Virus record (IMG/VR): IMGVR_UViG_3300009093_000034
Coordinates: 1 to 64,000 of that record
Strand: one strand, 5' to 3'
DNA length: 64,000 bases
Below, piece after piece: positions 4,939-43,008 of this stretch. The notes beneath the pieces are model-generated. The model had not been told where the DNA came from and did no database searches. It saw nothing but the letters and a program-made list of their open reading frames with translations. The number at the start of each line of letters is the position of its first letter. Within the stretch, counting starts at the first letter, position 1. The translations under genes and the position numbers were made by a program.

Positions 4939-5246
4939 TGAAGACCACAGTCAAGGCTCTTGAGAAAGAACACCAAGAATCTGAAGAGATGGATCAATCG
5001 TTCGAGAAGAATCCGGCCAAGAGAGCCATTCAAGAACTCTTCTCAGGTCCATTTCATGGAAATGCTTACAAACGATACTCTTTGGCACAGATCAAGGACA
5101 GAGTTGTAGAAGCTCTAGACAAGGCCATTGAGGATCCAAAGATCATGATCTACAAGGCCACAGCAACCCGTCTTCTTGCTAAAGTCAAGAAGATCAAAGA
5201 CTCCAATGAGCTCCTACTCGTATTGAACGAGTATCTGTTTACCTAA
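4938..5246 (+). CDS. Hypothetical protein
   Basis: Translationally coupled to dnaX (TAATG overlap). Confidence 0.65.
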   Translation: MKTTVKALEKEHQESEEMDQSFEKNPAKRAIQELFSGPFHGNAYKRYSLAQIKDRVVEALDKAIEDPKIMIYKATATRLLAKVKKIKDSNELLLVLNEYLFT

Positions 5247-5247
5247 A

Positions 5248-6105
5248 ATGTCAGAAAAAATAACCAAATATTCCTCGTCCAGGTTGGGAACCTTTGAATC
5301 CTGCAAGTTGAAGTATGATCTTTCATACAATCAAGGTTTGTACGCAGATGATTCCCAGCAAGCTTTAGTCACCAAAAAAGGAACAGCGTTCCACGATTTC
5401 GCAGAACGTTACACACCAGATTGGACCGAAGAGAAGATTGAAGCAGAGAGACTTGCCATCGAGACAAAGTTCTCTCTTCCTCCAGAGTTCTCTCTTAAAA
5501 ACCCAGTCAAGAGGTTCATCGAGTTCTACAATCTTGTGATCCAACCAGTCATCGATTCGGGTGGAAAGTTCCACAGAGAGATCGCATTTGACTTCAGCTT
5601 GGATGGAAAAAGTTTCACAGGTCGATTGGACATCTTGCTTGAGAAAGCAGATGGAACCTTTGTGATCCTTGACCACAAGACCAAGAAATCTACTTCTACC
5701 TCGTACTACGCAGACCAGATGCTTCTTTACGTCTGGGCTCTTCATAAGCAATTTGGGATCCCAGAGAACGAACTCGCTAGACGAGTCTCTATCTCGATCT
5801 TCTTCCCCTTTGCAAACCCTGATGAACCTGAGGTTTCAAAGTTGATCAAGGCCGTGAAGTTCACGGATGTTCAACTTAATCAAACCAGAGAAAAGAAGAA
5901 AGAGTTGATCCAGATCATTGAATCTGGAGAATGGGAACCAGAACCTACCATCTCTAAGATCTGTGAGTTCTGTTCCTTTGCAGGTATGAAGAAGTACTGC
6001 AAACTATCCGCCGACGTAGGAATTGTCCCTACTAGGGGAATCATCATAAAGACAAGAGAGTGGGCTCTAAATGTTGAGAAGACTATACCTGTTCGACGTA
6101 GATGA
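5248..6105 (+). CDS. PD-(D/E)XK nuclease, Cas4/AddB-like
   Basis: KGTAFHDFAE, GRLDILL...VILDHKT, QMLLY; one N-terminal Cys plus a C-terminal CEFC...C consistent with an Fe-S staple. Confidence 0.85.
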   Translation: MSEKITKYSSSRLGTFESCKLKYDLSYNQGLYADDSQQALVTKKGTAFHDFAERYTPDWTEEKIEAERLAIETKFSLPPEFSLKNPVKRFIEFYNLVIQPVIDSGGKFHREIAFDFSLDGKSFTGRLDILLEKADGTFVILDHKTKKSTSTSYYADQMLLYVWALHKQFGIPENELARRVSISIFFPFANPDEPEVSKLIKAVKFTDVQLNQTREKKKELIQIIESGEWEPEPTISKICEFCSFAGMKKYCKLSADVGIVPTRGIIIKTREWALNVEKTIPVRRR

Positions 6106-17208: not shown

Positions 17209-17247
17209 AATTTTCTCCTTAATTCTTTAGTATAAAAAGAAAAGTTA

Positions 17248-17258
17248 TGAGATATTGT
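17248..17258 (+). promoter_or_regulatory. TGAGATATTGT motif upstream of rIIA
   Basis: Exact copy of the recurring motif. Confidence 0.65.
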
Positions 17259-17288
17259 AGTCATACCTATCAGGAGTCCTATACTCGT

Positions 17289-19466: not shown

Positions 19467-19529
19467 ACTTTGTTTTCGCCTTAGGAGCGAAACGTATATT
19501 ACTAAGTGAATTAGGAGGAGCACACCAAT

Positions 19530-20591
19530 ATGATTCGATTTGTGCAGACCCCGAAGGGAGTCTCAATCTATCTTGGCAATGACACACTCATTGTCTCGAA
19601 GACCCATGAGAACTTCCAGGCGGTCATCAATGCCTTGGCCGACGATAAGACGACCGAGGAACAGGTTCGCGAACTCGCTGACCTGAAGAAGAGCGTCGAC
19701 CTATGGTCGAAGGGAGAGCTCAAGGTAGGAGACGACGATGTCGTTACCTACAAGGCCCGCGGCCTGAGTCCCAAGCTCACGAGCAGGATCCTCAAGTTGG
19801 TCAAGGAAGTTTCGGCTAAGCCCGACAACGCCAAGACCCTCGAGATCCTCACCGCATTTCTGGGAAATCTTTTCCAGAACCCTTCAAGGACCGCTGTCGA
19901 AGGTCTCTATGGCTTCTTGGAAGCCTGTGATCTTCCTTTGACCACTGACGGTTTCTTCCTCGCCTACAAGAAGGTTCGTCCGGACTACGGTTCGATTCGC
20001 GCCACGCCTGAAGGCATCCACCTGGACAACACTCCAGGAAAGGAAGTGACCATGGATCGAAACCTGGTTGACGAGAACCCCAACAACACCTGTTCTACCG
20101 GACTTCACGTGTGCTCGTACAACTACCTCACTCACTACGGTGACAGCGAGCTCGATCGTGTGGTTGTTGTCAAGGTCAATCCGAGAGATGTTGTGGCGGT
20201 TCCTACCGACTACAGCAACCAGAAGATGCGCACCTGTGGGTACAACGTCATCGACGAGATCCCCAACAACGAGGGCGAGGTTCTTACCTCTTGGACCTAC
20301 AGCGCCAAGCCTATCAATTGGATCCGAGACACTGTCGAGGAACTCAAGAAGGCTTACGCAGAAGCGTTCAAGATCAAGATCGCCGATCTTGAGGTCAACA
20401 CGGCTCTCTTTGGCTACGGTATCACCGATCGCCAGAAGAACGAGTTCCTCATCGGTCTAGTCAAGCAGTTCAAGCTCTCTACCGGTCTTACGGACTCCAG
20501 TGCCGAAAAGATCATCGAGTGGGGTGCCAAGAACACCGGCTTTGGAAACATTCGAAGCATCCTTAAGTGGATCTCGAACTTCGCAGCCTAA
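19530..20591 (+). CDS. rIIB: rIIB-like protein
   Basis: NPSRTAVEGLYGFL, TTDGFFLAYKKV, TCSTGLHVCS, VKVNPRDVVAVPTDY, KMRTCGY; directly follows rIIA. Confidence 0.9.
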   Translation: MIRFVQTPKGVSIYLGNDTLIVSKTHENFQAVINALADDKTTEEQVRELADLKKSVDLWSKGELKVGDDDVVTYKARGLSPKLTSRILKLVKEVSAKPDNAKTLEILTAFLGNLFQNPSRTAVEGLYGFLEACDLPLTTDGFFLAYKKVRPDYGSIRATPEGIHLDNTPGKEVTMDRNLVDENPNNTCSTGLHVCSYNYLTHYGDSELDRVVVVKVNPRDVVAVPTDYSNQKMRTCGYNVIDEIPNNEGEVLTSWTYSAKPINWIRDTVEELKKAYAEAFKIKIADLEVNTALFGYGITDRQKNEFLIGLVKQFKLSTGLTDSSAEKIIEWGAKNTGFGNIRSILKWISNFAA

Positions 20592-22011: not shown

Positions 22012-23693
22012 TACTTGTAAGCTCCAGCCTTTCCTAAGAGTCCTTGACCTTCGAACTCGTCCTTGTATGCTTTGAAAGCATACTGATCAAGTTCCTTGAG
22101 CCAAGCGTCATCGATCTCGTAGTACATGTTGTCAAGGCGATCTAACCATTTGTGATCTAGCTCACCTTCTTTGGCGTCTTCTTCTAATTGACCTTCTTCG
22201 TTACAATCATAGCAAGGAGCAGTTCCTTCACCGTGGCATTCTTCACAGTCGACTTGATCGATGTTTCCATCTTCGTCCTCGTCTTCAACTGTTCCTTCAC
22301 CATCGCATTCTGGACACTTTACATATCTTTTGTTGTGGCAAGAGTAACATTCTTCATGAACACCTTGAACAACATCAGCAATACTTTCAAAAATAGTGAA
22401 AACCTTTACTCCAGTATCGGTCTTAAAGATACCTTCTCTAGAAGCTAGTTCTAACATCTGGTCTTGAAGATCTGTGTCATAAGAGTTGTTGCTAAAGTAT
22501 CCTCGTTTCTCAGAGGCATACCCGTTATCAAGATACTGCATGATTCCACCATTACCGATCTGGTAGTTAGCAGCTCCAAAGAACACAACAATTGCTGCTT
22601 CATCTCCATAGGTATGTAGAATGTACTCAATGAACTCTCCCCAACTCTTGTCTTTAGCAGGACCGTTGTCTTGCCAATCTTCGTAACAAATGTCCATAAT
22701 GGTCTGGAGGAAGCCGTGTTCTTCACCACTCTTTGGGGTTGCCTTTAATTTAGAGACAAGGTTTTGGGTGATCTTTTCTTGAAGTCTTTTATCGTTCATG
22801 TTTGTTCCTTTTGTGGATTCTTCAAAATCTTCATTCAAAAACTCATTAGGATTCACTGCATTCAAGAAGTCTTGAGCCAAAAGAGTTGCTGCAGAATGAA
22901 CAATGCTTGCGTGGTCTTTTGCTAAGTGCCATCTTTTAGCATCTTCAATGAAAGAAACAATGGTTTCTAAGCTCACCATATTGTTGATCCAATTTCTAGT
23001 TTTGTCTTGGTTGTAGTCATCTTCTGAAAGAAGTTCAACTGCGTCATCAATAACTTCATCGACAATTTCATCATGCTCATGTCTAAATGAAGATTCTTCA
23101 AATCTAGTCTCGTGTTCAAAATCTTCAATCATGTCTTTTGGATCATTTAAGACTTCAAGAACTACTTCAGATAGCTCATCTGCATCAGACATGTTAGTAA
23201 TTCTTTCTACATAACTTTTAACAAAACGATCCAAACTCTTAGAGTTTTTAACCTTAGTTTTGTTTTTTATGATCATCTTGAAAACTTTTTTAACGTTTCT
23301 AATGATGTCGGCCATGTAGTTATTCCACTCATCATTCCATTCATTTACATCGTCTTCGTCTTGCTCAAAGTCCATGTTTTCAATTTTTCTTTCATGAGAC
23401 TTAAAGGCTTCGAGATCATCCTTAAGGGACTCGATAGCTATTTTGTCCAAGTTAGGTTGCATTCCGCCTCTAGCCTGCATAAGGTTCACCATAGAGTCGG
23501 AACCAAGTGATTCTGAAAGGAGATTAGAAAGAAGAGAATCTAAGGTGTTAAGTGCTTCATGAGCCTTGAAACCATGTACAAACATAGCCTTTCTTTGCGC
23601 GTCAGCTTTCTTCTTTGAACGGAATTTGTGTGGATGTTTTGGAGGATTATCTCCAACATTTTCGTAGCCACCGTCAACTTTCTCTGTGCCCAT
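22011..23693 (-). CDS. Acidic multi-domain protein with DMP19/DUF4375-like domain and DnaJ-type Zn finger
   Basis: ANYQIGNGGIMQYLDNG; four CxxCx(G)x(G)-type repeats; LDRLDNMYYE; ACTAATT motif and AAGGAG RBS upstream. Confidence 0.65.
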   Translation of the reverse strand: MGTEKVDGGYENVGDNPPKHPHKFRSKKKADAQRKAMFVHGFKAHEALNTLDSLLSNLLSESLGSDSMVNLMQARGGMQPNLDKIAIESLKDDLEAFKSHERKIENMDFEQDEDDVNEWNDEWNNYMADIIRNVKKVFKMIIKNKTKVKNSKSLDRFVKSYVERITNMSDADELSEVVLEVLNDPKDMIEDFEHETRFEESSFRHEHDEIVDEVIDDAVELLSEDDYNQDKTRNWINNMVSLETIVSFIEDAKRWHLAKDHASIVHSAATLLAQDFLNAVNPNEFLNEDFEESTKGTNMNDKRLQEKITQNLVSKLKATPKSGEEHGFLQTIMDICYEDWQDNGPAKDKSWGEFIEYILHTYGDEAAIVVFFGAANYQIGNGGIMQYLDNGYASEKRGYFSNNSYDTDLQDQMLELASREGIFKTDTGVKVFTIFESIADVVQGVHEECYSCHNKRYVKCPECDGEGTVEDEDEDGNIDQVDCEECHGEGTAPCYDCNEEGQLEEDAKEGELDHKWLDRLDNMYYEIDDAWLKELDQYAFKAYKDEFEGQGLLGKAGAYK

Positions 23694-23853
23694 TAGTGCC
23701 TATCTCCTTGCCAATGGTGAATTAGTACTTCAGATTCGTATATTATTAGAATCCGTAAATTGTGCAAAATCAGAAAAATCTAATCTAGAATTTTGGAATT
23801 TTGCACTCCACAAAACACTAATTAAGACTCGTGCACAGGAGCAAAAGTTCACC

Positions 23854-26178
23854 ATGCTGATCACCAAAAAAGATGGTTCTAACCAGCCTTTTGATGAGAA
23901 CAAGGTTCTCAAAACCCTCAAGATAAGATCTGAGGGACTATCTGGAGTTAATCAAGATAAAATTTTCAAAGAGTTCACCAAGAACATCGCCGAAGGAATC
24001 TCAACGTCTGACCTAGAGAAGATGCTGATCCTTTCCGCGTCTTCATTGGCTGAAACTCACTTGGATTATGACAAGCTTGCCACTAGACTCTTCCTTCAGA
24101 AGATCTACAAAGAGGTTCTTGGCGGAACAGCTTCAGATGAAGAAAGAGACTCTGCTCACAAGCACGCTTTCATCCATTTCATTGACTCCTCTCCTCTTCT
24201 TGACGATAGAATGAGAAACTGCTTCGACTTGGTCAGACTCTCCAATGCTCTTGATCTTGAACAAGACAAGAGGTTCAACTTCCTTGGTCTCACAAGCATC
24301 TACGAGAAGCTTCTCATTCGTGATGAAAACGGCTTCGTCAAAGAAACTCCACAGATGTTTTTCATGCGCGTCGCTATGGGTCTTTGTCTTGAAGACGTGG
24401 ATGATTTCGTCCTTGATCTTTACGGGATCTACTCTCGTCATGAAGCCATCAGTTCAACCCCAACTCTCTTTGCTTCCGGCTTGAAGAAGGCTCAATTGTC
24501 TTCTTGTGCTGGTGGAGTCGTTACCGATACCACGGAGTCCATCTTCGGAACAGCTGAAGACTCTTTCAATCTTGGTAAGTGGAGCTATGGAATCGGTACC
24601 TCTGTTTCCAAGCTTCGTGCCATCGGAAGCACAGTTAAGTCCACAAGAATCCAATCCAGCGGAATCATCCCATTCCTTCAGATATACAACGCCATCTGTA
24701 ACTCGGTCAATCGAGGAGGTCGTAAGAGAGGAGCCATGTGCTTCTACCTTGAGAACTGGCACTATGAGACTGAGGACTTCATCAAGCTTCGCAGAAACTC
24801 TGGTGATGAGAGAATGAGAACCCACGATCTCAACACCGCTCTTTTCATCTCTGATGAGTTCATGAAGAGAGTTATGAGAGACGAGCAATGGATGCTCATC
24901 GATCCTAAGGAAGCCATTGACAACGGTTACGACCTCACAGAGCTCTCTGGAAGAGCTTTCTCTCAAGCCTACAAAGAACTTGAGAACCTAGCTAAGGCCG
25001 GTAAGATCAAGCTCTTCAAGTTCATCAAGGCTAAGGACCTTTGGAAGCAACAGCTCCTTAGCCTCTTCGAGACCGGACACCCTTGGGTCACGTTCAAGGA
25101 TGCTATGAACGTCAGGAACCCAAACCAGAACTCAGGAAACATCTACTCCAGCAACCTCTGTACAGAGATCGCTCAGAACGTTCTTCCAGATGCCTCGGGA
25201 GCAGGAGAGTATTTCAACTGTTTCTTGGCTTCTGCTAACCTCGGTGAGATGTTTCATCCAGAGACCCAGTTCGATGTTGAGAAACTTACCCACGCTGTTC
25301 GAATCTTGGTACGAGCTTTGGACAATGCAAATGATTTGAACTATTACCCCACAGAAGGTGTAAGAGCCGGTTCACAACGATACCGTTCTATCGGTGTTGG
25401 AGTTATGGGATGGCAAGACCTTCTATTTAAGAACAAGATTCCTTTTGATTCTCCTGAAGCTGTTGATCTTCTTGATCGAGTAGCTGAGGTTTGGAGTTAC
25501 GCTGCAATTGATGCTTCTGCGGCTCTTGCTGTTGAAAGAGGAAGTTACCAGAACTTTGAAGGAAGTCTTTGGAGTCAAGGAATTCTTCCAGTTGACACCT
25601 TGGCCATGCTCTCAGAGTCAAGAGACCTTCCATTGACCGTAGAGTCAACCACTCGTCTGGATTGGGACGTCTTGAGAGAGAAGGTAAAGAAGGGCATGAG
25701 AAACGGTTACGTTATGTCTCCTGCTCCTAACGCTTCCACCGCTCTTTACTTGGGAGTTTATCCAGCTACTGAGGCTCAATATGCCAACATGTACTCCAAG
25801 GAGAACATGCTCGGTAAGTTCTCTATCATCAACGAGTATCTTGTAGATGATCTAGCTAAACTAGAGGGAATTGACGTTGAAGAAGTAGTTCAGAAGATCA
25901 AGAACTCTCGAGGAGATCTAGCAAAAGCTGGAATCAAGGACGAGAAGATCCTTGAGCTTTACAGAAATGCTTTTGAGGTAGATCCATTGGCACAGGTCGA
26001 ACAAGCCAAGGTGCTTGCTAAGTGGATCGACCAATCACACTCCAGGAACATCTTCCTGGACACAAACAGTGGCAAGGTCTTGAATGATGTGTATCTTCAA
26101 GGTTGGTTGGGAGGTGTTAAGACCTTCTACTACTTGAGATCCAAGGCCGCCACATCAGCAGAGAACTCGACAGAATAA
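23854..26178 (+). CDS. nrdA: Class Ia ribonucleotide reductase alpha subunit with ATP-cone
   Basis: ITKKDG cone, TPQMFFMRVA, STPTLF, QLSSC, GGRKRGA, SSNLCTEI, NCFLASANL, PAPNAS, KTFYYLRS; the likely start is ATG 23854, not 23686. Confidence 0.95.
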   Translation: MLITKKDGSNQPFDENKVLKTLKIRSEGLSGVNQDKIFKEFTKNIAEGISTSDLEKMLILSASSLAETHLDYDKLATRLFLQKIYKEVLGGTASDEERDSAHKHAFIHFIDSSPLLDDRMRNCFDLVRLSNALDLEQDKRFNFLGLTSIYEKLLIRDENGFVKETPQMFFMRVAMGLCLEDVDDFVLDLYGIYSRHEAISSTPTLFASGLKKAQLSSCAGGVVTDTTESIFGTAEDSFNLGKWSYGIGTSVSKLRAIGSTVKSTRIQSSGIIPFLQIYNAICNSVNRGGRKRGAMCFYLENWHYETEDFIKLRRNSGDERMRTHDLNTALFISDEFMKRVMRDEQWMLIDPKEAIDNGYDLTELSGRAFSQAYKELENLAKAGKIKLFKFIKAKDLWKQQLLSLFETGHPWVTFKDAMNVRNPNQNSGNIYSSNLCTEIAQNVLPDASGAGEYFNCFLASANLGEMFHPETQFDVEKLTHAVRILVRALDNANDLNYYPTEGVRAGSQRYRSIGVGVMGWQDLLFKNKIPFDSPEAVDLLDRVAEVWSYAAIDASAALAVERGSYQNFEGSLWSQGILPVDTLAMLSESRDLPLTVESTTRLDWDVLREKVKKGMRNGYVMSPAPNASTALYLGVYPATEAQYANMYSKENMLGKFSIINEYLVDDLAKLEGIDVEEVVQKIKNSRGDLAKAGIKDEKILELYRNAFEVDPLAQVEQAKVLAKWIDQSHSRNIFLDTNSGKVLNDVYLQGWLGGVKTFYYLRSKAATSAENSTE

Positions 26179-26200
26179 AGGAAAAGGAAGGAGAAGAGGT

Positions 26201-26494
26201 ATGGTTAAGATCTACACCACCAATAGCTGCGCTGTTTGCAAGCGAGCTAAGACTGATATGCTAGTTAAGGGCATTGCATATGAGGAGCACAACGTCGAAG
26301 ACAACGAACAAGACTTTGACGTGATGATTGAGGCGACTGGAAAAACTGCCGTTCCTCAATTTGACATCGATGGAGAGTGGGTGGTAGGTTACAACTCTTC
26401 GGTCATTGAGAAGGCTTCACGAGATGAAGACGACTTTGAACTTGTTGGAGTAGGTGGACAAGAGTACGCAACTTGCGAATCTTGTGAAGGTTAA
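26201..26494 (+). CDS. Glutaredoxin/NrdH-like redoxin with C-terminal CxxC tail
   Basis: KIYTTNSCAVC, TAVPQFDIDGEWVVGYN, then an acidic linker and terminal CESCEG; strong RBS. Confidence 0.85.
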   Translation: MVKIYTTNSCAVCKRAKTDMLVKGIAYEEHNVEDNEQDFDVMIEATGKTAVPQFDIDGEWVVGYNSSVIEKASRDEDDFELVGVGGQEYATCESCEG

Positions 26495-26495
26495 C

Positions 26496-27497
26496 ATGGG
26501 AATTCTAGATATCCGAGATGAGATGGAGAACAAAGAACTCCATCGAAATCCATACCCACAATTTCTCAAACACTTTACCAACGGTGTAGCCAACAACTGG
26601 ACAGTTGCTGAGATCTCTCTTCAAGACGATCAAGAGCAATGGAACGTTCCTGGAAAGTTGACTGATGAAGAGAAGCAACTTGTTCTGAAGAACCTTAAGT
26701 TCTTCGGAGTTTGTGAAGCTCTTACCATGGACAACGTTGCTGTTGCTATCCTTCCTAGAATTCAAGACGGTTACGTGAGAATGGCATTGATTCGCCAAGC
26801 TTATGAAGAAGCTCTTCACTCTCAAACCTTCTTGACCATCGCTGAGTCTCTTTCCATTAAGATCTCCGACATCTATCAAGAGTACAAGGACACGCCTTCT
26901 GTTAAGGCCAAGATTGATTTTGTTAATTATCTGATTGGACAAACAGAGAAAGACGGTTTTGATATCACAACGATTGAAGGTAAGCAAGATCTTCTTCAAG
27001 ACATGATCGGGTTTTTCCAGATCCTTGAAGGAACCTTCTTCTTCACCAACTTTGCTCAATTGTTCTCTCTTCGTCGAAAGAACAAGATGAAAGGACTATC
27101 CAGCTTCATTGACTACATTGCAAGAGACGAATCTGTTCACATTGCTATCGGCCGAGACCTGATCAACATCATCATCAAAGAGTATCCCGAGATCTGGACT
27201 CCATCTTTTAGAGAAAAAATGAGTACATCTTTTGCAACCGCGGTTAGATTAGAAGATGCTTACTTAAACGATACTATTCCAGAGACTCTTCTAGGTCTTA
27301 ATCGAGAATCGTTTAAGGATTACATTCGATTCATTGCCAATCGAAGAATGAAAGGTATTGGTCTAGAAGGTCTTTGGCCTAACATGAAAAATCCTTTCCC
27401 TTGGATGAGTACAGAGAATGATCTCCCTACTGAAACGAACTTCTTCGAGTCTAGACCAAAAGAGTACAAAACTGGCGATGTCAACATGGACTTCTAA
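26496..27497 (+). CDS. nrdB: Ribonucleotide reductase beta subunit
   Basis: NNWTVAEISL..D, QAYEEALHSQTF, LEGTFFFTNF, YIARDESVH, ETNFFESRPKEY. Confidence 0.95.
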   Translation: MGILDIRDEMENKELHRNPYPQFLKHFTNGVANNWTVAEISLQDDQEQWNVPGKLTDEEKQLVLKNLKFFGVCEALTMDNVAVAILPRIQDGYVRMALIRQAYEEALHSQTFLTIAESLSIKISDIYQEYKDTPSVKAKIDFVNYLIGQTEKDGFDITTIEGKQDLLQDMIGFFQILEGTFFFTNFAQLFSLRRKNKMKGLSSFIDYIARDESVHIAIGRDLINIIIKEYPEIWTPSFREKMSTSFATAVRLEDAYLNDTIPETLLGLNRESFKDYIRFIANRRMKGIGLEGLWPNMKNPFPWMSTENDLPTETNFFESRPKEYKTGDVNMDF

Positions 27498-34118: not shown

Positions 34119-36110
34119 ATGGGACAACTTCAGAGATTTAGAGAATCCTTCACCATGCAACAAGGTCAATTCGAAAGAATTCCTTTGACCGAAGCTCTCC
34201 AAGAAAAGTATCACATTCCTGAGACCGTCAAGAGACTTACTGAATCTACCAAATATCAAGAGGCTACGACTAGACTTGTTGAAAAGGCTTTCAAAGACCT
34301 TGAGGAATCAGGTACTTCAGTAGAACTTATCTCTAGATTACGAGAAGCTCTAAAAGTAACACTTCCTGAAAACAGGAACCTTTACAAGTTTCCAGTCTCA
34401 AAGTACGACAACCTAAACATCAACAAGCGCCGATACCCAAAGAAACTTTGGGAAAGAGTTATTCATGATCAAGAAGATCGTTGGAAAGGACTCTCAGGTC
34501 TTGCTGACCACCCATCTGACGATTCTGATGGAGAGTTCAAGAACTCATCTATCGTTTGGTTGGACATGGAGATCGACCCAAAAACTAACCTAGTTTGGGG
34601 TGTGGGTGTTTTTGTTGGTCCTTACGGAAGACTTGCACAAGAGATCATTGACGTTGGTGGACGTGTTGGATTCAGCTCTTCAGGTTTTGGAGAGCTTGGT
34701 TATGACGGTGAGACCGTTGATCCAGAGTCCTACATCATCGAGCGTGTTGCAGACCTAGTTCTAAACCCTTCTCAAGGTGTTTATGGTGCTTCTGACAACA
34801 ACTTGAATGTAGAGTACTCGTCTCAGAAACCTGTTAAAGAAAATTCTACTAATTCTCTAGAAACCCTTTCTCGGGTGGAGGAAAAACACCGAATGTCTGA
34901 ACAAACTAAACCTGCTATTAGCAAGATCGAGGAGAAGAAGTTCCGAAGAGACGTTGAGTCTCTCTTGAACGACGCTTCTAAGTTAGCCGACCCTCAGGTT
35001 CGTCTTGTAGAACTCACAGAGATCCTCGACGCCTTTGAGGAAGGAATTGCTCCTGATCTTAGAGAAAAGGTTGAGACCGAGATCTTAGCTGAGAAGCTCA
35101 AGATCGAGACCATGCTTCGTGAAACAAGCGAGACCCTTTCCGCTTTTGGAGCTACTAGCCCTGATGCTATCAAGGCCGGAGTTGCTCTTCTTGCCGAAGA
35201 GGTTAACCTAGTCGCTGCTGAGGCAAAAGACTGGGAGAAGATCGCTATTGCCCTAAGAGACAGCAACAAGTCTCTTAAGGAAGAGAACCAGAAGCTCTCT
35301 GCAGAGCTTTCTATCCGTCCTTCTGTTGATGCTTTCGGAAAACTCACTGAGAAGGTCAAGGTTCTTGAAGAACAAAAGCACAAGTTCGCTACTAAGTATC
35401 TTCAGGAAGCTGAAGAAGAGAACGAAACATCAGAAGAGATGGAAAAGAAGATGGAGTCTCTTAACAATGAGATCTCTGGTCTTAAGTCCAAGATTCTTGA
35501 GTTCGTCTCCCAAGAGAAGAAGTTCGCTTCTGCTCATGCTGCCGAGATCACCGAGTCCAAGAAAGAAGTTGAGTCAGCTAAGAAGTTGGCCGAGGAATCT
35601 AAGCTTGCTCTAGAAGAAGCCGAGACCACCATCGACCTTCAGGAACAACAGATCACCAGACTTCAGAACAGTCTCAAGGAAACTAGAGTCGCTGCTCAGA
35701 AGCTTGAGGAAGAATACGTAAACTTCCAGAATCAAGTTAAGCTTGAGAGTGCACCTCCTAAGATCGTTCCTCGCTTTGAGGAGAGAGTCAATGGACTCTT
35801 GAACTTCAGAGAGAACAACGGTGTTGAAGTTGAAGCTCTTTGGCAGACCTTGACCGATCGTCACGGTTCTGCTATTAAGCCTTTTGAGAAGAACATCAGA
35901 GGAGCCAAGACCATCAGAGAGGCTACCTCAGCTTACTACCGAGCACTTCCTGAGTTTGAAGAGAACAACATCGCTCTTCACGAAGCTGAACTTCCAGATT
36001 CTACCTCTGTTACCAGACAAGAAAGAGTTGAGATGTTCGAGCGCCAAGGTGTTAAGTTTGGTGGAAAGACCTTGATCGACAGAGTCCTTGAGAGAAAGGG
36101 CTACCAGTAA
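34119..36110 (+). CDS. Prohead protease (T4 gp21/S77-like) fused to a long coiled-coil scaffold
   Basis: NINKRRYPKKLWE, GLADHP (His), GPYG, VGFSSSGFG (Ser), ADLVLNPS; C-terminal approx. 400 aa heptad-rich. Confidence 0.85.
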   Translation: MGQLQRFRESFTMQQGQFERIPLTEALQEKYHIPETVKRLTESTKYQEATTRLVEKAFKDLEESGTSVELISRLREALKVTLPENRNLYKFPVSKYDNLNINKRRYPKKLWERVIHDQEDRWKGLSGLADHPSDDSDGEFKNSSIVWLDMEIDPKTNLVWGVGVFVGPYGRLAQEIIDVGGRVGFSSSGFGELGYDGETVDPESYIIERVADLVLNPSQGVYGASDNNLNVEYSSQKPVKENSTNSLETLSRVEEKHRMSEQTKPAISKIEEKKFRRDVESLLNDASKLADPQVRLVELTEILDAFEEGIAPDLREKVETEILAEKLKIETMLRETSETLSAFGATSPDAIKAGVALLAEEVNLVAAEAKDWEKIAIALRDSNKSLKEENQKLSAELSIRPSVDAFGKLTEKVKVLEEQKHKFATKYLQEAEEENETSEEMEKKMESLNNEISGLKSKILEFVSQEKKFASAHAAEITESKKEVESAKKLAEESKLALEEAETTIDLQEQQITRLQNSLKETRVAAQKLEEEYVNFQNQVKLESAPPKIVPRFEERVNGLLNFRENNGVEVEALWQTLTDRHGSAIKPFEKNIRGAKTIREATSAYYRALPEFEENNIALHEAELPDSTSVTRQERVEMFERQGVKFGGKTLIDRVLERKGYQ

Positions 36111-37714: not shown

Positions 37715-37946
37715 AATAGAAGAGTTTTTATCTTTTTCGAAAGCTGCTACTAACTTATCAGGATTAGCGATACTAACTAAATCGTAAGCTAATAATTCGG
37801 CTTTATATGCCGAGAATTGATAATGGGATACCTTAAACTGCCCAACAACGGATCTGTCAACAACATATGGACAACGAGAATTGCCGGATGTGCTTCGAGT
37901 CACTTTTACTCAGACGTTTTTACAATACACGCAAAAGGAAAACATT

Positions 37947-39725
37947 ATGTCAGGTGGAATCACCGGAAGAATGAACAGCGAATTGCGCGAAGCTATCACT
38001 GATAAGCTTTACCGCGATGAGCGCTCCTACCGCGACGACAAGCTCGTTGAAAAGTGGAACAGAATTCCCGAGGTAGGAAAGAATATTAAGAAGCTCGACG
38101 AAGGAACCGCAAGGCTCTTGGCTCGTCACTTGGAAAACCAAGCTCGCTTCATGGGTCGCTTGACTGAGGCCCAACTCTCTAGCGGATTCCAGGGTTTCTC
38201 CCCTGAGAACATGCTTCGTTTGGTTCGTTTGGCATACCCAAACACCATCAGAAACAAGCTCTTCACCGAGTTCGCAATGGAATCCGCAAAGGACTCCATC
38301 AAGTATATCCGCCCTGTCTACACCACCACCGCTAACGGTCAGAACTTGAACGATCGTACCTTCGGTGTTCCTGGTTGGTCAAACGCTGGCGATGCCTACG
38401 ATCCTGCCGATCCTTGGAACCTTAACGGTTCGAACGACATCAACAACAGCGACTACCGCAGAGCAATGTACGAAACCAACGAAGATCGTTACACCAACCC
38501 AATGGCTAACGCTCTTGTTGCAACTTTCGACGGAACTCACACTTGGACCGTTTACGACTCTGTTAAGGCAGTTCAGACGTTCTCTGCCGTTACCGACACA
38601 TCAGCTGTTGCTAACGTTGGTGGAACCACTCTAACCCTTAACACCACCGGAACTTGGGTCATCTATGGTACTCTTACCATCGGTACCACCCACGCCGCAG
38701 TCGGTTCTTCTGCCTTCTCTCTCGGCTACGTCGATGGATACGCTTCTCTCTTCACTGCAGCAGACAGCTATCCTCCTTCCGCCGGAACTGGTTGGCACCT
38801 TCAGGAGCAGAACGTCATCGCTACTCAGAACAAGACTGGCGCTGCTCTCTCCGTTAACGGATCTTGGATGATCAAGTCTGGATCCACTCTCACCATCACC
38901 GCAACCTCCCTCGTTGGTGTGTTCGCTCTCGGTGGTGCAGATGCCGCAAACGTCCGCGGTGGTTATGGCCGTTTTAACCCAGAAGGTGACTTCCAGGGTA
39001 ACTTCCTTGGTGAAGTTGAGTTGATCATGACCGACTACTGGTTCAGACCACAGCCAACTACCATTGGTGTTACGTGGAGCCAGTTGACCGAGCTTGTTCT
39101 CGACACCTCCTTCGGAGTTGCCGCTGAGGAGCTCTTGGTTGACTACGCTGGCCAGGAAATCAAGAGATCTCTCGACGTTCGCGCCGTAAAGATCGCTTAC
39201 CAAGCCGCCAAGATGAACCCAAGCTACTACACGATCACCTTTGATGCATCCTCTGGAAATAGCACGGACGACTCTTACCTCTCTACCGCTCAGACCTTCA
39301 CTCAGGCTATCGCCCGTGTTGCAGACGTTCAATTGAACGATATCAACCGTGGTGGAGTTAGCCGAATGGTTGGTGGACCTGCAGCAATGACTTACCTCCG
39401 CATGGTCGGTGGTTTCTCTGCTAAGGGCCAGATGACCCCAGTCGGTGGTCACCAGATTGGAGAGCTTCAGGGCATTCCATTGTTCAAGGTTCCTTCTAAC
39501 GTCATCCCTGATGACGAGATCCTTTGTGTTTGGAAGAACGACGAGAACGAGGCAGACGTTGCAGTTGCCTTCGGTACCTTGGTTCCTTTCTTCAGCACTG
39601 GTATCATCCAGAGGAAGAACTTCTACAAGGAAGCAGGTCTTTCGACCTACGGTGACTGGAACGTTCTAAACAGACGTTACCTTGGTCTTATCAAGATCAC
39701 CGGTCTCCGCCAGCTCCAGAACTAA
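37947..39725 (+). CDS. Major capsid protein (T4 gp23-like, HK97 fold) with large Thr/Gly-rich insertion
   Basis: LVEKWNRIP, LENQ, LTE-AQ maturation-like site, MLRLVRLAYPN, GEVELIM, QEIKRSLD, strong codon bias, followed by a terminator; likely start is ATG 37947 (AAGGAA RBS). Confidence 0.9.
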   Translation: MSGGITGRMNSELREAITDKLYRDERSYRDDKLVEKWNRIPEVGKNIKKLDEGTARLLARHLENQARFMGRLTEAQLSSGFQGFSPENMLRLVRLAYPNTIRNKLFTEFAMESAKDSIKYIRPVYTTTANGQNLNDRTFGVPGWSNAGDAYDPADPWNLNGSNDINNSDYRRAMYETNEDRYTNPMANALVATFDGTHTWTVYDSVKAVQTFSAVTDTSAVANVGGTTLTLNTTGTWVIYGTLTIGTTHAAVGSSAFSLGYVDGYASLFTAADSYPPSAGTGWHLQEQNVIATQNKTGAALSVNGSWMIKSGSTLTITATSLVGVFALGGADAANVRGGYGRFNPEGDFQGNFLGEVELIMTDYWFRPQPTTIGVTWSQLTELVLDTSFGVAAEELLVDYAGQEIKRSLDVRAVKIAYQAAKMNPSYYTITFDASSGNSTDDSYLSTAQTFTQAIARVADVQLNDINRGGVSRMVGGPAAMTYLRMVGGFSAKGQMTPVGGHQIGELQGIPLFKVPSNVIPDDEILCVWKNDENEADVAVAFGTLVPFFSTGIIQRKNFYKEAGLSTYGDWNVLNRRYLGLIKITGLRQLQN

Positions 39726-39749
39726 TCTAGACTAGATTCTTAAGTCAAG

Positions 39750-39780
39750 AAAAACCCTCTCGAAAGAGAGGGTTTTTTAT
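39750..39780 (+). terminator. Intrinsic terminator after MCP
   Basis: AAAAACCCTCTC-GAAA-GAGAGGGTTTTT. Confidence 0.9.
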
Positions 39781-39807: not shown

Positions 39808-40338
39808 ATGACACACTACTTCAGCACAGAAGATCTAGAACGACTCATGATGAATCAGATCCAATACCAAAAGGATCTAGATGAAGAATTTAAGGTTCCT
39901 CTTCTTGACATTGGTTCAACTCTTGAACGTCACCTTCGAAGCATTGAGATCCCATCGGATAGAGTCAAGATCTTGGTGATGAACACCTCTGTTGAGAAGT
40001 TCACCATCAACAACACTGAGGTGATCATCCATGCAAAGCCGATCCCAACTCTGGAGTCAAAGGATCTCGAGTTCTTTCCAGAGCAAAAGAGATACATTGA
40101 AGAAAACATTCAAGACGTGTTTGATACTCTGACAGAGTTCGACTTCTTGGTCTTCGGTCTTTTCATCCCATATGTGTTGAATGGAACCATGACTTGGAAC
40201 ACTGACATCAATGAACAACCTAACGCTCTTAAGACCTCAGCCTTCTTGGGAGGTTACATGGTCTTAACCACAAAGACATCTCCTTACTCGTTGGATGCTT
40301 ACTCCAAGGAATGGAGAAAGATGCTTGACAATAGTTAG
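39808..40338 (+). CDS. Mini MCP-paralogue 1
   Basis: LERLMMNQIQYQKDL and DFLVFGLFIPYVLNG resemble MCP LARHLENQARFMGRL and DVAVAFGTLVPFFSTG. Confidence 0.55.
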   Translation: MTHYFSTEDLERLMMNQIQYQKDLDEEFKVPLLDIGSTLERHLRSIEIPSDRVKILVMNTSVEKFTINNTEVIIHAKPIPTLESKDLEFFPEQKRYIEENIQDVFDTLTEFDFLVFGLFIPYVLNGTMTWNTDINEQPNALKTSAFLGGYMVLTTKTSPYSLDAYSKEWRKMLDNS

Positions 40339-40367
40339 GTTTATACTATGTTGATTAGGAGATCCTT

Positions 40368-40910
40368 ATGATCGAAGTTCCAGAAACAGAACTCTATGGA
40401 ATGTTTCAAAACCAACTTAAGTTCCAAGAAAGACTTCCTGAGACTAACACTTTTCTAAAGTTCCTTCCTCCGATCGATGTGGGAACTAAGATTAGAAAGG
40501 TCTTTGGAACTCTAAATGTTCCTGAGAATACTAAAATCATCTCTTTGGATACAGCCAAAGCTGCCTATTCTTACAAAAAAGATGCTCTAGATAAAGCTCT
40601 TTTCTTTCCAGAAGAAGGAGATTCTGTCTACTACTTCAGAGTTAGACCAATCTCCTTACTAGGTGAAGTTTACACCCATCCTTCAGATCAAGAAAGAGAC
40701 TTTTTCTTAGATTTCAAGAACAATCTAGAAAACTTCATTAACGAGATCTCAAACAAAACAAATGATCCTTCTAAAAAGATAGTTCTAGGAATTCTAGTTC
40801 CATTCTTCCTTACTGGAGCTATTCAAAGAGAGAACTTCTTCAAGGACTCTCAATTGGCTCTGTATGGGGATTGGACCACTATTGATGTTCAGGTAAAATC
40901 AGATGATTGA
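40368..40910 (+). CDS. Mini MCP-paralogue 2
   Basis: IVLGILVPFFLTGAIQRENFFKDSQLALYGDWTTI vs MCP VAFGTLVPFFSTGIIQRKNFYKEAGLSTYGDWNVL; FQNQLKFQERLPE vs LENQARFMGRLTE. Confidence 0.8.
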   Translation: MIEVPETELYGMFQNQLKFQERLPETNTFLKFLPPIDVGTKIRKVFGTLNVPENTKIISLDTAKAAYSYKKDALDKALFFPEEGDSVYYFRVRPISLLGEVYTHPSDQERDFFLDFKNNLENFINEISNKTNDPSKKIVLGILVPFFLTGAIQRENFFKDSQLALYGDWTTIDVQVKSDD

Positions 40911-41409
40911 AGAGACTTTGATAAAGGTGATCTCCCAATCTCAGCTTGATCAACTTTACGAGAACCAAAAAAACTATTACTACACCCTAAACGACCATCA
41001 TCCTTTGGTAGATGCTCTCCCTCTCTATAAGGTCAAAGAAGCCTTGGAACAAGTCTTTCAAGGTCTCAATGTTCCAAATAATGTTGATTTTCATGTTGTA
41101 AGTAACCCAAACGGATTGAATGATCCAGGAGATTGGTACAACTATGATAGGTTTACCGATGAAGGAGAGAAGGTCTCAGTTCAATATTGGTTTAGACTTT
41201 ATCCTGGAAAGGTCATAGTAGAGTTGACTCCATCGTTCTTAGATGATTACAAGAAAGAGTTTCAGAACTACATCAACAAGAACTTAGCAGAGATTAAGAG
41301 ATGGCATCCTAGAAAAAAGATGGTCATGACGATTGCCATTTGGATTCCTTTCTGGTTTAACACTTCAAGTAGAAATGTGAACTTGTTCGGCGACCATCTC
41401 ATTCATTAA
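40903..41409 (+). CDS. Mini MCP-paralogue 3
   Basis: LYENQKNY, VFQGLNVPNN, YWFRLYP, KKMVMTIAIWIPFW..LFGD shared with paralogue 2. Confidence 0.6.
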   Translation: MIEETLIKVISQSQLDQLYENQKNYYYTLNDHHPLVDALPLYKVKEALEQVFQGLNVPNNVDFHVVSNPNGLNDPGDWYNYDRFTDEGEKVSVQYWFRLYPGKVIVELTPSFLDDYKKEFQNYINKNLAEIKRWHPRKKMVMTIAIWIPFWFNTSSRNVNLFGDHLIH

Positions 41410-41418
41410 GGAAAAAGT

Positions 41419-42372
41419 ATGAAACTATCTTATGAACAAAAGATTCAAATCTTAATTGATAATCAACTAAAGTACATGAAAACTCTTAAAGACGAAGACA
41501 AGAAACGTTTTCCCTTTAAAGAAGAACATGTAGAAAAGATGGTAAGAACCATCTTCAAAGAAGATGGTGTGATCAATCAAATGTTTGATTGGACAACTTC
41601 TCCTGTAGGAGAACCATTAACCACAGATTACCTGGTAACATCTATGTCTGGTCCAGAAGATGGGATTCCAGAAGTTACTCTTGATATAAAAACCCATACG
41701 TTCACAAAGGGTCATCATTCTTATCTAGTAACATCGTCATCTAAACTTGACGAGATTAAAGAAAGTATGAAAATATGGGGAGAAGAAGTTCTTATTCAGA
41801 TTGTAGCTGAAGCACTACGAAACAGTTTAGGGTCTCGTTTCATCAAAGAGATTCAAAAAATCATTGAGTTGAATCCTTATTACAAAAGCCTATTTGATAT
41901 ACCTTTCTCTATAGAAGAGACAGAGGGAAGATCGTTTGTTAAATCGGTAGACGTTTCATTCGTTCAAAATTATGTTCATGCTGAAGCAAGTATGTACAGA
42001 CAACTCACTAGAGGTGGAGTTACTCATATTTTATCAGGTGTTTTAATGGATTCTTATTGGAGAGTCCACCAGCAATTTGATTGGAGATCTGCTACTCAAC
42101 CAGTTTTTATTCATAGAACGGGATCTATCCAAGGAATCCAGATGTGGAGAGGCCCAAAACATCTTATTGAAGAAAGTTCTGGTTATTTTCTTTGGAAAAA
42201 TCCAGATATAGAAGAAGATAAGCTAATGACTCTCGCTATTCAAACCCCTTTTATTTTAAGTAACAGATCAAACGATTTCTCTTCTAACGAGTTCTTCTTT
42301 GACGGAGACTTAGTAGTCTTTCAACCAGGATACGTAAGAGAGATTAAACTCTTAGGTTTGCCATCCATCTAA
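41419..42372 (+). CDS. Compact MCP-paralogue (near-complete HK97 core without the insertion)
   Basis: Collinear matches to MCP: LIDNQLKYM; PEVTLDI; EEVLIQIVAEALRNSL; NPYYKSLFD; LTRGGVTHILSG; GSIQGIQMW; WKNPDIEED; TPF; GDLVVF..GYVREIKLLGL. Confidence 0.8.
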   Translation: MKLSYEQKIQILIDNQLKYMKTLKDEDKKRFPFKEEHVEKMVRTIFKEDGVINQMFDWTTSPVGEPLTTDYLVTSMSGPEDGIPEVTLDIKTHTFTKGHHSYLVTSSSKLDEIKESMKIWGEEVLIQIVAEALRNSLGSRFIKEIQKIIELNPYYKSLFDIPFSIEETEGRSFVKSVDVSFVQNYVHAEASMYRQLTRGGVTHILSGVLMDSYWRVHQQFDWRSATQPVFIHRTGSIQGIQMWRGPKHLIEESSGYFLWKNPDIEEDKLMTLAIQTPFILSNRSNDFSSNEFFFDGDLVVFQPGYVREIKLLGLPSI

Positions 42373-42389
42373 CTATTAACTAATTTAAC

Positions 42390-42641
42390 ATGCCACTAAA
42401 ACCTCGAATCGGTGTCCACTACGAAAGCATCAGGCCACAAGAAACCGCTGAGATGGCCATTCAACGACTTAAGATCAGACCTAAGGATTGGGTCATTCTT
42501 CCTATCATCAAACTTTCTGGATCTCAAAAGATCCTTCCACTTAAGTTCTCAGGTATCTCAGACTCGATGACTAAGATCGAAGGACCTGGTTTTATCATTG
42601 AAAAAATGTACGATCTTTTGACTAAATCCCAAATCTCTTAA
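42390..42641 (+). CDS. Hypothetical protein (candidate leaderless)
   Basis: ACTAATT-N4-ATG. Confidence 0.65.
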   Translation: MPLKPRIGVHYESIRPQETAEMAIQRLKIRPKDWVILPIIKLSGSQKILPLKFSGISDSMTKIEGPGFIIEKMYDLLTKSQIS

Positions 42642-42659
42642 GATATTGTAAGACGAGAG

Positions 42660-42962
42660 GTGAACATGATCGGAAAACTGATTGGTGGTGTGGTCCTCGT
42701 GATCATCGCTGCTATTCTGTTCTGGCTGATTTGGGGTCTTCTGACCCCCTGGATCGTCAATTCCATCCCCGCTGGGGAGTGGAAAGCTTTCATGGGTGTG
42801 GTGGTCACCATCGTCGTGGGTTGGTTTGGAGGAATCGTTCTTCCTCTGGTCCCCCTGATTGCTGGTATCGTCTTCATCTTCAAGTTCTTCGGTCAGGCTT
42901 TTGCCTTGGCCACCGGTTCGAACATCGGTAAGTATCGTTACCGTGGTCGTCCCTACCAGTAA
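42660..42962 (+). CDS. Membrane protein
   Basis: Two to three TM segments; GAGGTG RBS; AAGATATTGT motif upstream. Confidence 0.75.
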   Translation: MNMIGKLIGGVVLVIIAAILFWLIWGLLTPWIVNSIPAGEWKAFMGVVVTIVVGWFGGIVLPLVPLIAGIVFIFKFFGQAFALATGSNIGKYRYRGRPYQ

Positions 42963-42983
42963 GAACTTTCAGTTTTGTTAAAG

Positions 42984-43008
42984 ATCCTCCCGAAAGGGAG
43001 GATTTTTT
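42984..43008 (+). terminator. Intrinsic terminator
   Basis: ATCCTCCC-GAAA-GGGAGGAT plus T-tract. Confidence 0.85.

What the first reader, a model, noticed from the sequence alone, without database searches (positions are those of the whole stretch)
39808..42372. Tandem array of four shrunken major-capsid-protein paralogues directly after the MCP terminator
Seen: the 317-aa ORF aligns collinearly with the MCP core (NQ helix; EV-x-L; EE-x-L...R-x-SL; NPYYKSLFD vs NPSYYTITFD; RGGV; G-x-I/L-QGI; WKN; GD; IK-x-x-GL) but lacks the insertion and pro-peptide. Three 168-180-aa ORFs keep only the N-terminal NQ helix region, a Y-x-(F)R-P strand and the C-terminal VPFF..GD strands; the 40368 ORF is strikingly close to the MCP C-terminus. 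They are separated from the MCP by a strong terminator, lack the ACTAAYT motif, have TATACT-like -10 elements upstream (approx. 39783, 40343) and look more AT-rich than the MCP, so they do not resemble bulk structural genes. Known: T4 gp24 is a single full-length MCP paralogue; satellites redirect capsid assembly; defences such as CapRel are triggered by phage capsid proteins. Inference: a family of capsid-derived non-structural proteins acting as decoys for capsid-sensing immunity, as dominant-negative inhibitors of competing phage assembly, or as assembly/size regulators. I do not know of a described system like the approx. 170-aa mini forms.
Basis: partly seen in the sequence, partly recalled or inferred. 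Interest (0 to 1): 0.85.

Follow-up and report, generated by a model that had tools for sequence, protein, structure and literature searches.

The report
Domain-deleted capsid-protein paralogue operon
Right after its major capsid gene, an uncultured 306-kb phage carries four intact genes that are cut-down copies of that capsid protein, three of them missing the central domain of the capsid fold; I found no description of such mini forms, and their role (extra capsid parts, assembly modulators or immune decoys) is untested.

Summary
Window 39808-42372 has four same-strand ORFs (O1 176, O2 180, O3 168, O4 317 aa) between two strong terminators, just after a gp23-type major capsid protein (MCP).

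- O4 matches the MCP core over about 230 residues (hhalign 98.7%, E 4e-16). It lacks the propeptide and the ~230-residue insert.
- O2 matches the MCP C-terminus directly (E 1e-12).
- O3 (via O2, E 1e-10) and O1 (profile, 94%) are linked only transitively.
- A profile of 11 small-family members hits many independent MCPs in three collinear blocks. One distant member (P0014) is plainly an internally deleted MCP.
- O2 gives a confident model (pLDDT 83): N-terminal helices, short strands, one long helix and a C-terminal hairpin, with no A domain.

The genes are intact, have ribosome-binding sites, are translationally coupled and are under purifying selection. They diverge far faster than the MCP (30-60% versus 94% identity between two phages). 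The array occurs only in this phage and one close relative. About 15 related MCP loci lack it, and 1.84 billion protein representatives hold only about 6 further clusters.

Function is inferred. I favour capsid-lattice-binding accessory proteins (about 0.45), against decoy or interference roles (about 0.3). This is a new variant of MCP duplication; interest 0.62.

The parts
37944..39725 (+). Major capsid protein, gp23 type, 593 aa counted from the ATG at 37944; parent of the paralogues
   Evidence: Pfam Gp23 6e-6, above the curated cut-off. PHROG 138 major head protein 5e-7. AAGGA ribosome-binding site before ATG 37944. Homologues start at the same position.
39749..39778 (+). Intrinsic terminator between the MCP and the array
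   Evidence: 13-bp stem plus T-run. About -20 kcal/mol, and an equivalent hairpin follows the MCP in L006.
39808..40338 (+). O1, 176 aa, the most diverged small-family member
   Evidence: hhalign against the O2/O3 profile: 94%, E 8.5e-8, 125 columns. Not significant against the MCP directly. Its slot holds a Lar-family gene in L006.
40368..40910 (+). O2, 180 aa, mini-MCP. It aligns with MCP 58-127, 361-375, about 400-411 and 528-583; the A domain, the insert and the propeptide are missing
   Evidence: BLASTP against the MCP 1e-12. MCP-clade HMM 2e-12. Block map. AF2 pLDDT 82.9, pTM 0.80. 59-60% identical orthologue in L006.
40903..41409 (+). O3, 168 aa, mini-MCP; its start overlaps the O2 stop by 8 nt
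   Evidence: O2 to O3 6.5e-11 over the full length. 30% identical orthologue in L006 with the same 8-nt overlap.
41419..42372 (+). O4, 317 aa. It keeps the shared N-terminal module plus the MCP C-terminal core, which I read as E-loop strand, P and A domains; it lacks the propeptide and the large insert
   Evidence: 48% identical orthologue in L006.
42379..42385 (+). ACTAATT motif 5 nt before the O5 start; the same motif precedes several head genes
42390..42641 (+). O5, 83 aa, unknown function, conserved directly after O4 in L006
   Evidence: 62% identity, E 3e-33; dN/dS about 0.16.
42660..42962 (+). O6, 100 aa hydrophobic (membrane-type) protein, also conserved after O5 in L006
   Evidence: tblastn 39% over 59 aa, E 4e-13.
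42980..43007 (+). Intrinsic terminator closing the unit
   Evidence: 12-bp stem plus T-run.

Best explanation
O1-O4 are a lineage-specific, translationally coupled operon of internally deleted paralogues of the phage's own gp23-type MCP.

Shown:
- O4 keeps the shared N-terminal helix module and the whole C-terminal core of the MCP. It lacks the propeptide and the ~230-residue insert (MCP about 128-354).
- O1-O3 keep only the N-terminal segment (MCP 58-127), one strand (361-375), a shortened helix and the C-terminal hairpin (528-583). They therefore also lack the A domain.
- All four begin about where the mature MCP N-terminus would lie.

Inferred:
- The retained pieces are the ones that in T4 make lateral contacts between subunits and capsomers (N-arm/N-fist, E-loop, P domain). 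The lost pieces build the capsomer centre (A domain), clamp within a capsomer (I domain) or act before maturation (propeptide).
- The proteins therefore most likely bind the edges of MCP capsomers or the MCP lattice.
- I favour auxiliary, dispensable capsid-associated factors of the phage's own very large head. O4 would be a special-position (for example penton-type) subunit, and the minis interface-filling cement or assembly cofactors, made at a low dose by read-through of the MCP terminator.
For: - Homology and collinear block structure.
- P0014 is an intermediate that still carries the MCP N-terminus (3e-8) and C-terminus (1e-9).
- Confident compact O2 model.
- Real genes: ribosome-binding sites, and 8-nt start/stop overlaps conserved in L006.
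- Purifying selection: dN/dS about 0.16-0.23 where dS can be computed, and dS saturated for O2 and O4.
- Position directly after the MCP in a head module, following a protease/scaffold-like gene and a 504-aa gene.
- T4 precedent: gp24 arose from gp23 by duplication, the I domain is inserted in the E-loop, and the N-arm/N-fist contacts four neighbouring subunits (PMC9958956).
- Lineage-restricted, fast-diverging, dispensable-looking genes also fit decoration proteins.
Against: - No direct evidence of virion association or of MCP binding.
- No extra MCP-derived ORF within 6-10 kb of the MCP in about 15 related phages, whose MCPs are mostly 39-62% identical over the full length (L022 about 26%).
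- O2, O3 and O4 are 60, 30 and 48% identical between two phages whose MCP C-termini are 94% identical. That is a lot of change for partners of a nearly invariant lattice.
- There is no ACTAAYT motif of the kind that precedes several head genes.
- GC3 of O2 and O4 is at the 7th and 2nd percentile.
- O1's slot holds a Lar anti-restriction gene in L006.
- Distant members lie among small non-structural ORFs.
- The O2 model was built with MCP rows in the alignment and has no significant fold match.
Confidence: 0.45

Rival explanations
1. Conflict proteins. The MCP mimics would bind host sensors that recognise the capsid protein (Avs7/8/10-type, CapRel-type or Lit-type) without activating them. Alternatively they would poison capsid assembly of co-infecting relatives or satellites.
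For: - Patchy, lineage-specific distribution and fast divergence under purifying selection.
- A variable slot shared with a Lar anti-restriction gene.
- Distant members sit among small accessory ORFs.
- Low GC3 and no head-gene motif.
- Capsid-sensing immunity is now known to be widespread, and it reads either the HK97 shape or short MCP motifs (10.64898/2026.01.04.697583).
- A satellite MCP homologue, Ccm, redirects assembly (PMC8569155).
Against: - No experimental or contextual link to any defence system, and no PADLOC match.
- Per, Avs7 extensively engages the A domain, which the minis lack.
- A mimic that carries the sensed epitope could just as well trigger the sensor.
- Expression timing is unknown, and the promoter-like elements are at chance level.
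- The location, tightly behind the MCP in the head module, suits a structural role.
Confidence: 0.3
2. Only O4 is functional, as a gp24-like penton protein. O1-O3 are by-products of duplication and deletion with little or no function.
For: O4 alone keeps a complete core. O1 is replaceable. O3 is only 30% identical between the two phages.
Against: - O2 and O3 are intact in both phages although synonymous sites are saturated. They keep conserved 8-nt overlaps and ribosome-binding sites.
- The small family persists as single genes in at least 6 other unrelated contig sets.
- The O2 model is compact and confident.
Confidence: 0.1
3. Chance similarity, or non-coding remnants of the MCP gene.
For: O1 and O3 are not individually significant against the MCP.
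Against: E-values of 1e-12 to 1e-21 for O2 and O4. Profile links for O1 and O3. Orthologues in a second phage. dN/dS below 1.
Confidence: 0.02

Closest known systems
T4 gp24 (vertex/penton paralogue of gp23)
   Same: It arose by duplication of the MCP gene, is encoded just downstream of it, and has the same fold (PMC9958956). O4 keeps the shared core and the position.
   Different: From general knowledge of T4, gp24 is near full length and keeps the I domain. O4 lacks the insert and the propeptide, and is missing from the MCP neighbourhood of related phages. The A-domain-less forms O1-O3 have no gp24 counterpart.
SaPIbov5 Ccm (satellite-encoded MCP homologue that takes the penton positions and redirects capsid size)
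   Same: An MCP homologue that acts by taking MCP positions in the lattice (PMC8569155). It is a model for how O4 could alter or poison assembly.
   Different: Ccm is encoded by a satellite, keeps a delta (scaffolding) domain and has a full HK97 core. The present genes sit in the phage itself, lack the propeptide, and three of them lack the A domain.
Dispensable decoration or cement proteins (T4 Soc and Hoc, lambda gpD)
   Same: They are accessory, lineage-variable proteins, and cement proteins bind between capsomers. That is the functional analogy I favour for the minis.
   Different: There is no sequence or fold relation. To my knowledge the known decoration proteins are not derived from the MCP itself. 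No binding was shown here.
Truncated large-terminase paralogue next to the full-length gene in Rak2-like jumbo phages (CBB_274/CBB_275)
   Same: It is a precedent for a conserved, truncated copy of a morphogenesis gene beside the full-length gene in a T4-related jumbo phage (PMC5259590).
   Different: It is a different protein family and a single copy, and its function is likewise unknown.

Membership tests
gp23-type MCP family (Pfam PF07068 Gp23) | The protein itself matches the family model above the curated cut-off | tested here: not met
   The MCP matches (26.3 bits against a cut-off of 24.4). None of O1-O4 matches Pfam Gp23 or PHROG 138. They are derived relatives detectable only through this clade's own MCPs.
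gp23-type MCP family (homology to the resident MCP) | Significant collinear similarity to the MCP | tested here: met
   O4 2e-21 and O2 2e-12 against the MCP-clade HMM. The small-family HMM hits MCPs in three collinear blocks. O1 and O3 are linked only transitively.
HK97 fold (complete) | N-arm, E-loop, P domain and A domain all present | tested here: inconclusive
   O4 aligns over the MCP region that should hold the E-loop strand, spine helix, A domain and P strands, but its model failed (pLDDT 36). The O2 alignment and model lack the A-domain segment, MCP about 412-527. Foldseek gives no significant hit; the best is a capsid protein at E 0.057.
T4 gp24-type vertex protein | MCP paralogue encoded next to the MCP in the head module | tested here: met
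   O4 lies 1.7 kb downstream of the MCP on the same strand.
T4 gp24-type vertex protein | Near-full-length copy that retains the insertion (I) domain | tested here: not met
   O4 has no counterpart of MCP about 128-354.
T4 gp24-type vertex protein | Conserved in phages that share the MCP type | tested here: not met
   No second MCP-derived ORF within 6-10 kb of the MCP in L003, L021, L022 and L033-L051. The rest of those genomes was not searched.
T4 gp24-type vertex protein | Forms pentamers at capsid vertices | not testable with these tools
   Needs virion proteomics or cryo-EM.
Ccm-type capsid-redirecting MCP homologue | Encoded by a satellite (PICI/SaPI) and acts on a helper phage | tested here: not met
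   The genes lie inside a 305.8-kb phage contig beside its own MCP.
Ccm-type capsid-redirecting MCP homologue | Retains an N-terminal delta/scaffolding domain | tested here: not met
   O1-O4 start at about MCP residue 50 and lack the propeptide. Only the distant member P0014 keeps it.
Known anti-phage defence proteins | Match to a PADLOC model | tested here: not met
   No hit at E up to 0.1. No anti-defence library was available.

The most novel reading that the evidence does not exclude
Phages encode domain-deleted mimics of their own capsid protein. These keep only the peripheral contact and recognition elements. They would act as antagonists of capsid-sensing immunity, or as assembly poisons against competing phages and satellites, and their paralogue number and sequence would turn over in an arms race.
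Probability: 0.25. Interest if true: 0.85.

Novelty: new variant of a known kind. Interest (0 to 1): 0.62.

Why it matters
MCP duplication is known to have produced one specialised shell subunit (T4 gp24) and one satellite weapon (Ccm).

This locus shows a graded series of deletion derivatives: the full MCP, then a core-only copy, then copies without the A domain. The series is kept under selection in one operon, and the mini form also occurs as single genes in other uncultured phages.

- If the minis bind the capsid, they would be, as far as I know, the first decoration or cement proteins derived from the MCP itself. They would also show that the peripheral half of the HK97 fold can exist as a stand-alone protein.
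- If they act in conflict, they would be a new counter-measure to capsid-sensing immunity or to capsid piracy.

Either way they give a compact, testable handle on which parts of the HK97 fold suffice for lattice contacts.

Tried and rejected
- AF2 of O4 with a 2-sequence alignment gave pLDDT 36 and was unusable.
- PDB sequence searches with 2- and 10-member MCP profiles did not reach T4 gp23 or gp24. The domain names therefore rest on the Pfam Gp23 match, collinearity and the O2 model.
- Foldseek of the O2 model against PDB and BFVD found nothing at E up to 0.001. There was only a weak excess of HK97 capsid and encapsulin hits.
The single-protein scan of genomes found nothing. The O4 profile found only the window's own contig in metagenomes.
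- Megablast and tblastn against deposited phages gave no relative of the array and only a 24.5% MCP hit.
- Pfam, PHROGs, NCBIfam and PADLOC gave nothing for O1-O6.
- P0013 (961 aa) is a coiled-coil repeat protein and I take it as a false positive.
The 7-mer TTATACT is absent from L006, where a TATACT lies at a different spacing from the start codon.
- A 'silent cassettes for MCP gene conversion' idea was rejected. Identity to the MCP is too low, and each copy is an intact ORF with its own ribosome-binding site.
- The N-terminal 'NQ helix' link to the MCP was not significant with window sequences alone. It became significant only through P0014, P0011 and the enlarged profile.
Full report
**Setting**

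The window is the first 64 kb of IMGVR_UViG_3300009093_000034, a 305.8-kb viral contig. An identical copy lies on a 111-kb contig.

The window carries rIIA/rIIB and NrdAB. It then has a head module:
- a 663-aa protein with a weak prohead-protease match and a long charged, helix-rich tail (34119-36110);
- a 504-aa gene;
- the major capsid protein (MCP).

The MCP matches Pfam Gp23 at 6e-6, above the curated cut-off, and PHROG 138 'major head protein'. I count the MCP from the ATG at 37944 (593 aa). That ATG has an AAGGA ribosome-binding site, and homologues begin at the same position.

The clade is essentially uncultured. Megablast finds nothing among deposited phages, and tblastn finds one 24.5% hit to a Pseudomonas phage head protein.

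**The observation**

Four + strand ORFs lie at 39808-40338 (O1), 40368-40910 (O2), 40903-41409 (O3) and 41419-42372 (O4). They are followed by O5 (83 aa) and by O6 (100 aa, hydrophobic). The whole unit is bracketed by strong terminator-like hairpins at 39749-39778 and 42980-43007.

Similarity to the MCP:
- **O4** matches at BLASTP 2e-18. hhalign gives 98.7%, E 3.7e-16, over 229 columns against MCP 355-589. A 10-member MCP-clade HMM gives 2e-21.
- **O2** matches the last 45 MCP residues at 47% identity, E 1e-12, and the clade HMM at 2e-12.
- **O3 and O1** are not individually significant against the MCP. O3 is related to O2 over its full length (6.5e-11). O1 matches an O2/O3 profile at 94% probability over 125 columns.
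- **All four** share an N-terminal module of about 55 residues.

**Bridging the small forms to the MCP**

An exhaustive HMMER search of 1.84 billion representatives with the small-family profile returned 12 hits. Six are further small proteins of 144-228 aa: P0008-P0011, P0014 and P0015. One hit is an MCP C-terminal fragment and one is a coiled-coil false positive.

P0014 aligns with the window MCP in three collinear blocks:
- residues 33-134 with MCP 30-133 (3e-8);
- a Y-x-F-x-P strand with MCP 359-372 (weak);
- residues 178-204 with MCP 546-572 (1e-9).

It is therefore an internally deleted MCP that still carries the propeptide region.

An HMM of the 11 small-family members hits the window MCP (2e-14) and independent MCPs in the same three blocks. 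P0011 also matches the MCP clade at both ends. In a joint alignment, O2 maps onto the MCP as follows:

| O2 residues | MCP residues |
|---|---|
| 8-75 | 58-127 |
| 84-98 | 361-375 |
| about 112-121 | about 400-411 |
| 125-180 | 528-583 |

The O4 HMM additionally hits the 'ENQ' helix of other MCPs with its residues 9-47.

**What was kept and what was lost**

Both O4 and the minis lack MCP residues about 1-50 and about 128-354. The minis also lack about 412-527.

The T4 head review states that the I domain of gp23 is inserted in the E-loop. It also states that the mature N-arm/N-fist contacts four neighbouring subunits, that P domains mediate inter-capsomer binding, and that gp24 probably arose from gp23 by duplication (PMC9958956).

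By collinearity I read the regions as follows:
- 128-354 is the I-domain-type insert;
- 412-527 is the A domain;
- the retained pieces are the N-arm region, an E-loop strand, a shortened spine helix and the C-terminal P-domain hairpin.

This reading is an inference. MCP profiles did not reach T4 gp23 or gp24 in the PDB by sequence.

The minis start at a position that aligns with MCP residue 50, next to an L-D-E motif of the kind cut by T4-type prohead proteases. That last point rests on my own knowledge and was not tested.

**Structure**

O4 with a 2-row alignment failed (pLDDT 36).

O2 with the 20-row alignment gave pLDDT 82.9 and pTM 0.80. The model has three N-terminal helices, four short strands, a 20-residue helix and a long C-terminal hairpin. 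One caveat is that the alignment contained MCP rows, which may pull the model towards the MCP.

Foldseek found no significant match in the PDB or BFVD. The best hit was a phage procapsid protein at E 0.057, with many HK97 capsids and encapsulins among the weak hits. The mini form is therefore not a recognised stand-alone fold.

**Are they genes?**

Yes, on the following evidence:
- O1, O2 and O4 have AAGGA or AGGAG ribosome-binding sites.
- The O3 start overlaps the O2 stop by 8 nt.
- A second phage, on a 3.2-kb contig (L006, GCA_037025285.1), has this order: MCP C-terminus, terminator, a Lar-family gene, an O2 orthologue, an O3 orthologue, an O4 orthologue, then O5 and O6 orthologues. It has the same 8-nt overlaps at O2b/O3b and O3b/O4b.

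Divergence between the two phages:

| Gene | Amino-acid identity | dN | dS |
|---|---|---|---|
| MCP C-terminus | 94% | 0.043 | 0.55 |
| O2 | 60% | 0.33 | saturated |
| O3 | 30% | 0.79 | 3.4 |
| O4 | 48% | 0.43 | saturated |
| O5 | 62% | 0.26 | 1.6 |

The paralogues are thus under purifying selection but change much faster than the MCP.

In a core tree, O4 and O4b sit on a very long stem outside all the MCPs. They are about 1.3 substitutions per site apart. One caveat is that only O5 gives a view of background divergence, so the contrast may partly reflect an unusually conserved, codon-biased MCP.

Within O4 the N-terminal module is the best conserved part (66-73% identity over residues 31-90).

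**Distribution**

- O2 and O4 have only the L006 orthologues among 5.8 billion protein clusters.
- The O4 profile finds only the window's own contig in 241 million metagenome records.
- Nothing was found in genome contigs or in deposited phages.
- About 15 related MCP loci have no second MCP-derived ORF within 6-10 kb. Their MCPs are mostly 39-62% identical over the full length, with L022 at about 26%.
- Distant small-family members occur singly on short contigs among small ORFs, an epimerase or a RecU-like gene, not beside an MCP.

**Regulation**

- ACTAAYT is not enriched overall. It does lie 5-36 nt before several head-gene starts, often just after terminators. It is absent before O1-O4 and present before O5.
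- Sigma-70-like and TATACT elements are at chance level.
- Expression timing cannot be decided from the sequence.
- A terminator after an MCP gene can simply lower the dose of downstream genes, as with T7 T-phi (my own knowledge). It is therefore not evidence against a structural role.

**Interpretation**

What is shown is a selectively maintained, translationally coupled operon of internally deleted MCP paralogues. They form a graded series: the full MCP, then core-only O4, then the A-domain-less O1-O3.

The mechanism is inferred. The copies keep what I read as the lateral-contact elements and lose the centre-forming and pre-maturation parts, so they should bind MCP capsomer edges or factors that recognise those surfaces.

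I rank the readings as follows:
- **Auxiliary capsid-associated proteins** (a penton-type or special-position O4, with the minis as cement or assembly cofactors): about 0.45.
- **Conflict roles** (immune decoys, or poisons of competing capsids): about 0.3.
- **Only O4 is functional**: about 0.1.
- **Chance similarity**: about 0.02.
- The remainder is for something I have not thought of.

Patchy distribution and fast divergence fit both of the first two readings. Dispensable decoration proteins (T4 Soc and Hoc, from general knowledge) behave in a similar way.

**Comparison with what is known, and novelty**

The closest known cases are T4 gp24 and the satellite protein Ccm. Ccm is an MCP homologue that takes the penton positions (PMC8569155). 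O4 fails the membership features of both: it has no I domain, it is not conserved next to related MCPs, it is not satellite-encoded and it has no delta domain.

I found no description of A-domain-less MCP derivatives. A truncated terminase copy beside the full-length gene in Rak2-like jumbo phages is a loose precedent.

My verdict is a new variant of a known kind (MCP duplication), with function untested.

Noticed in passing
L021 4508-7374 and L033 476-3555: In two related large phages the MCP gene is split. An N-terminal piece of 98 or 121 aa is followed by an insert of more than 1 kb and then the rest of the gene. In L021 the insert holds a 303-aa Cys-rich ORF at 4908-5819. This looks like an intron or homing-endonuclease insertion in the MCP gene.
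   Followed up: no
window 1082, 6667, 30357, 34095, 36180, 37749/37772, 42379, 55118, 63115: ACTAAYT lies 5-36 nt (109 nt for the MCP) upstream of gene starts, often directly after terminator hairpins, although the total count is at chance level. It is a candidate phage promoter element, possibly a late one.
   Followed up: partly
L006 382-612: In the sister phage, O1's slot just after the MCP terminator holds a Lar-family restriction-alleviation gene (Pfam 7e-11). The likely true start is an internal ATG, because the annotated GTG lies inside the terminator hairpin.
   Followed up: partly
window 34119-36110; L003 4547-6523; L022 3834-5825: A conserved protein of about 660 aa upstream of the MCP combines a weak prohead-protease (Peptidase_S77) match with a long charged, helix-rich tail. 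It may be a protease-scaffold fusion.
   Followed up: no
L003 12138-16657: In the 62%-identity relative, the MCP is followed by three large Cys-rich ORFs (641, 432 and 343 aa) that look like radical-SAM enzymes to me. This was not tested against any library.
   Followed up: no
L021 8513-13212 (- strand): Downstream of the MCP lies a run of paralogous ORFs (three of 273-278 aa, plus 214 and 261 aa) that look like DNA methyltransferases from their sequence motifs. This was not tested.
   Followed up: no
window 42390-42962: O5 (83 aa, no family) and O6 (100 aa, hydrophobic) are conserved right after the array in L006. They may belong functionally to the unit. O5 has its own ACTAATT motif.
   Followed up: partly
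window 17247-20591 and 23686-27497: rIIA and rIIB homologues and NrdA/NrdB, consistent with a T4-superfamily jumbo phage.
   Followed up: partly
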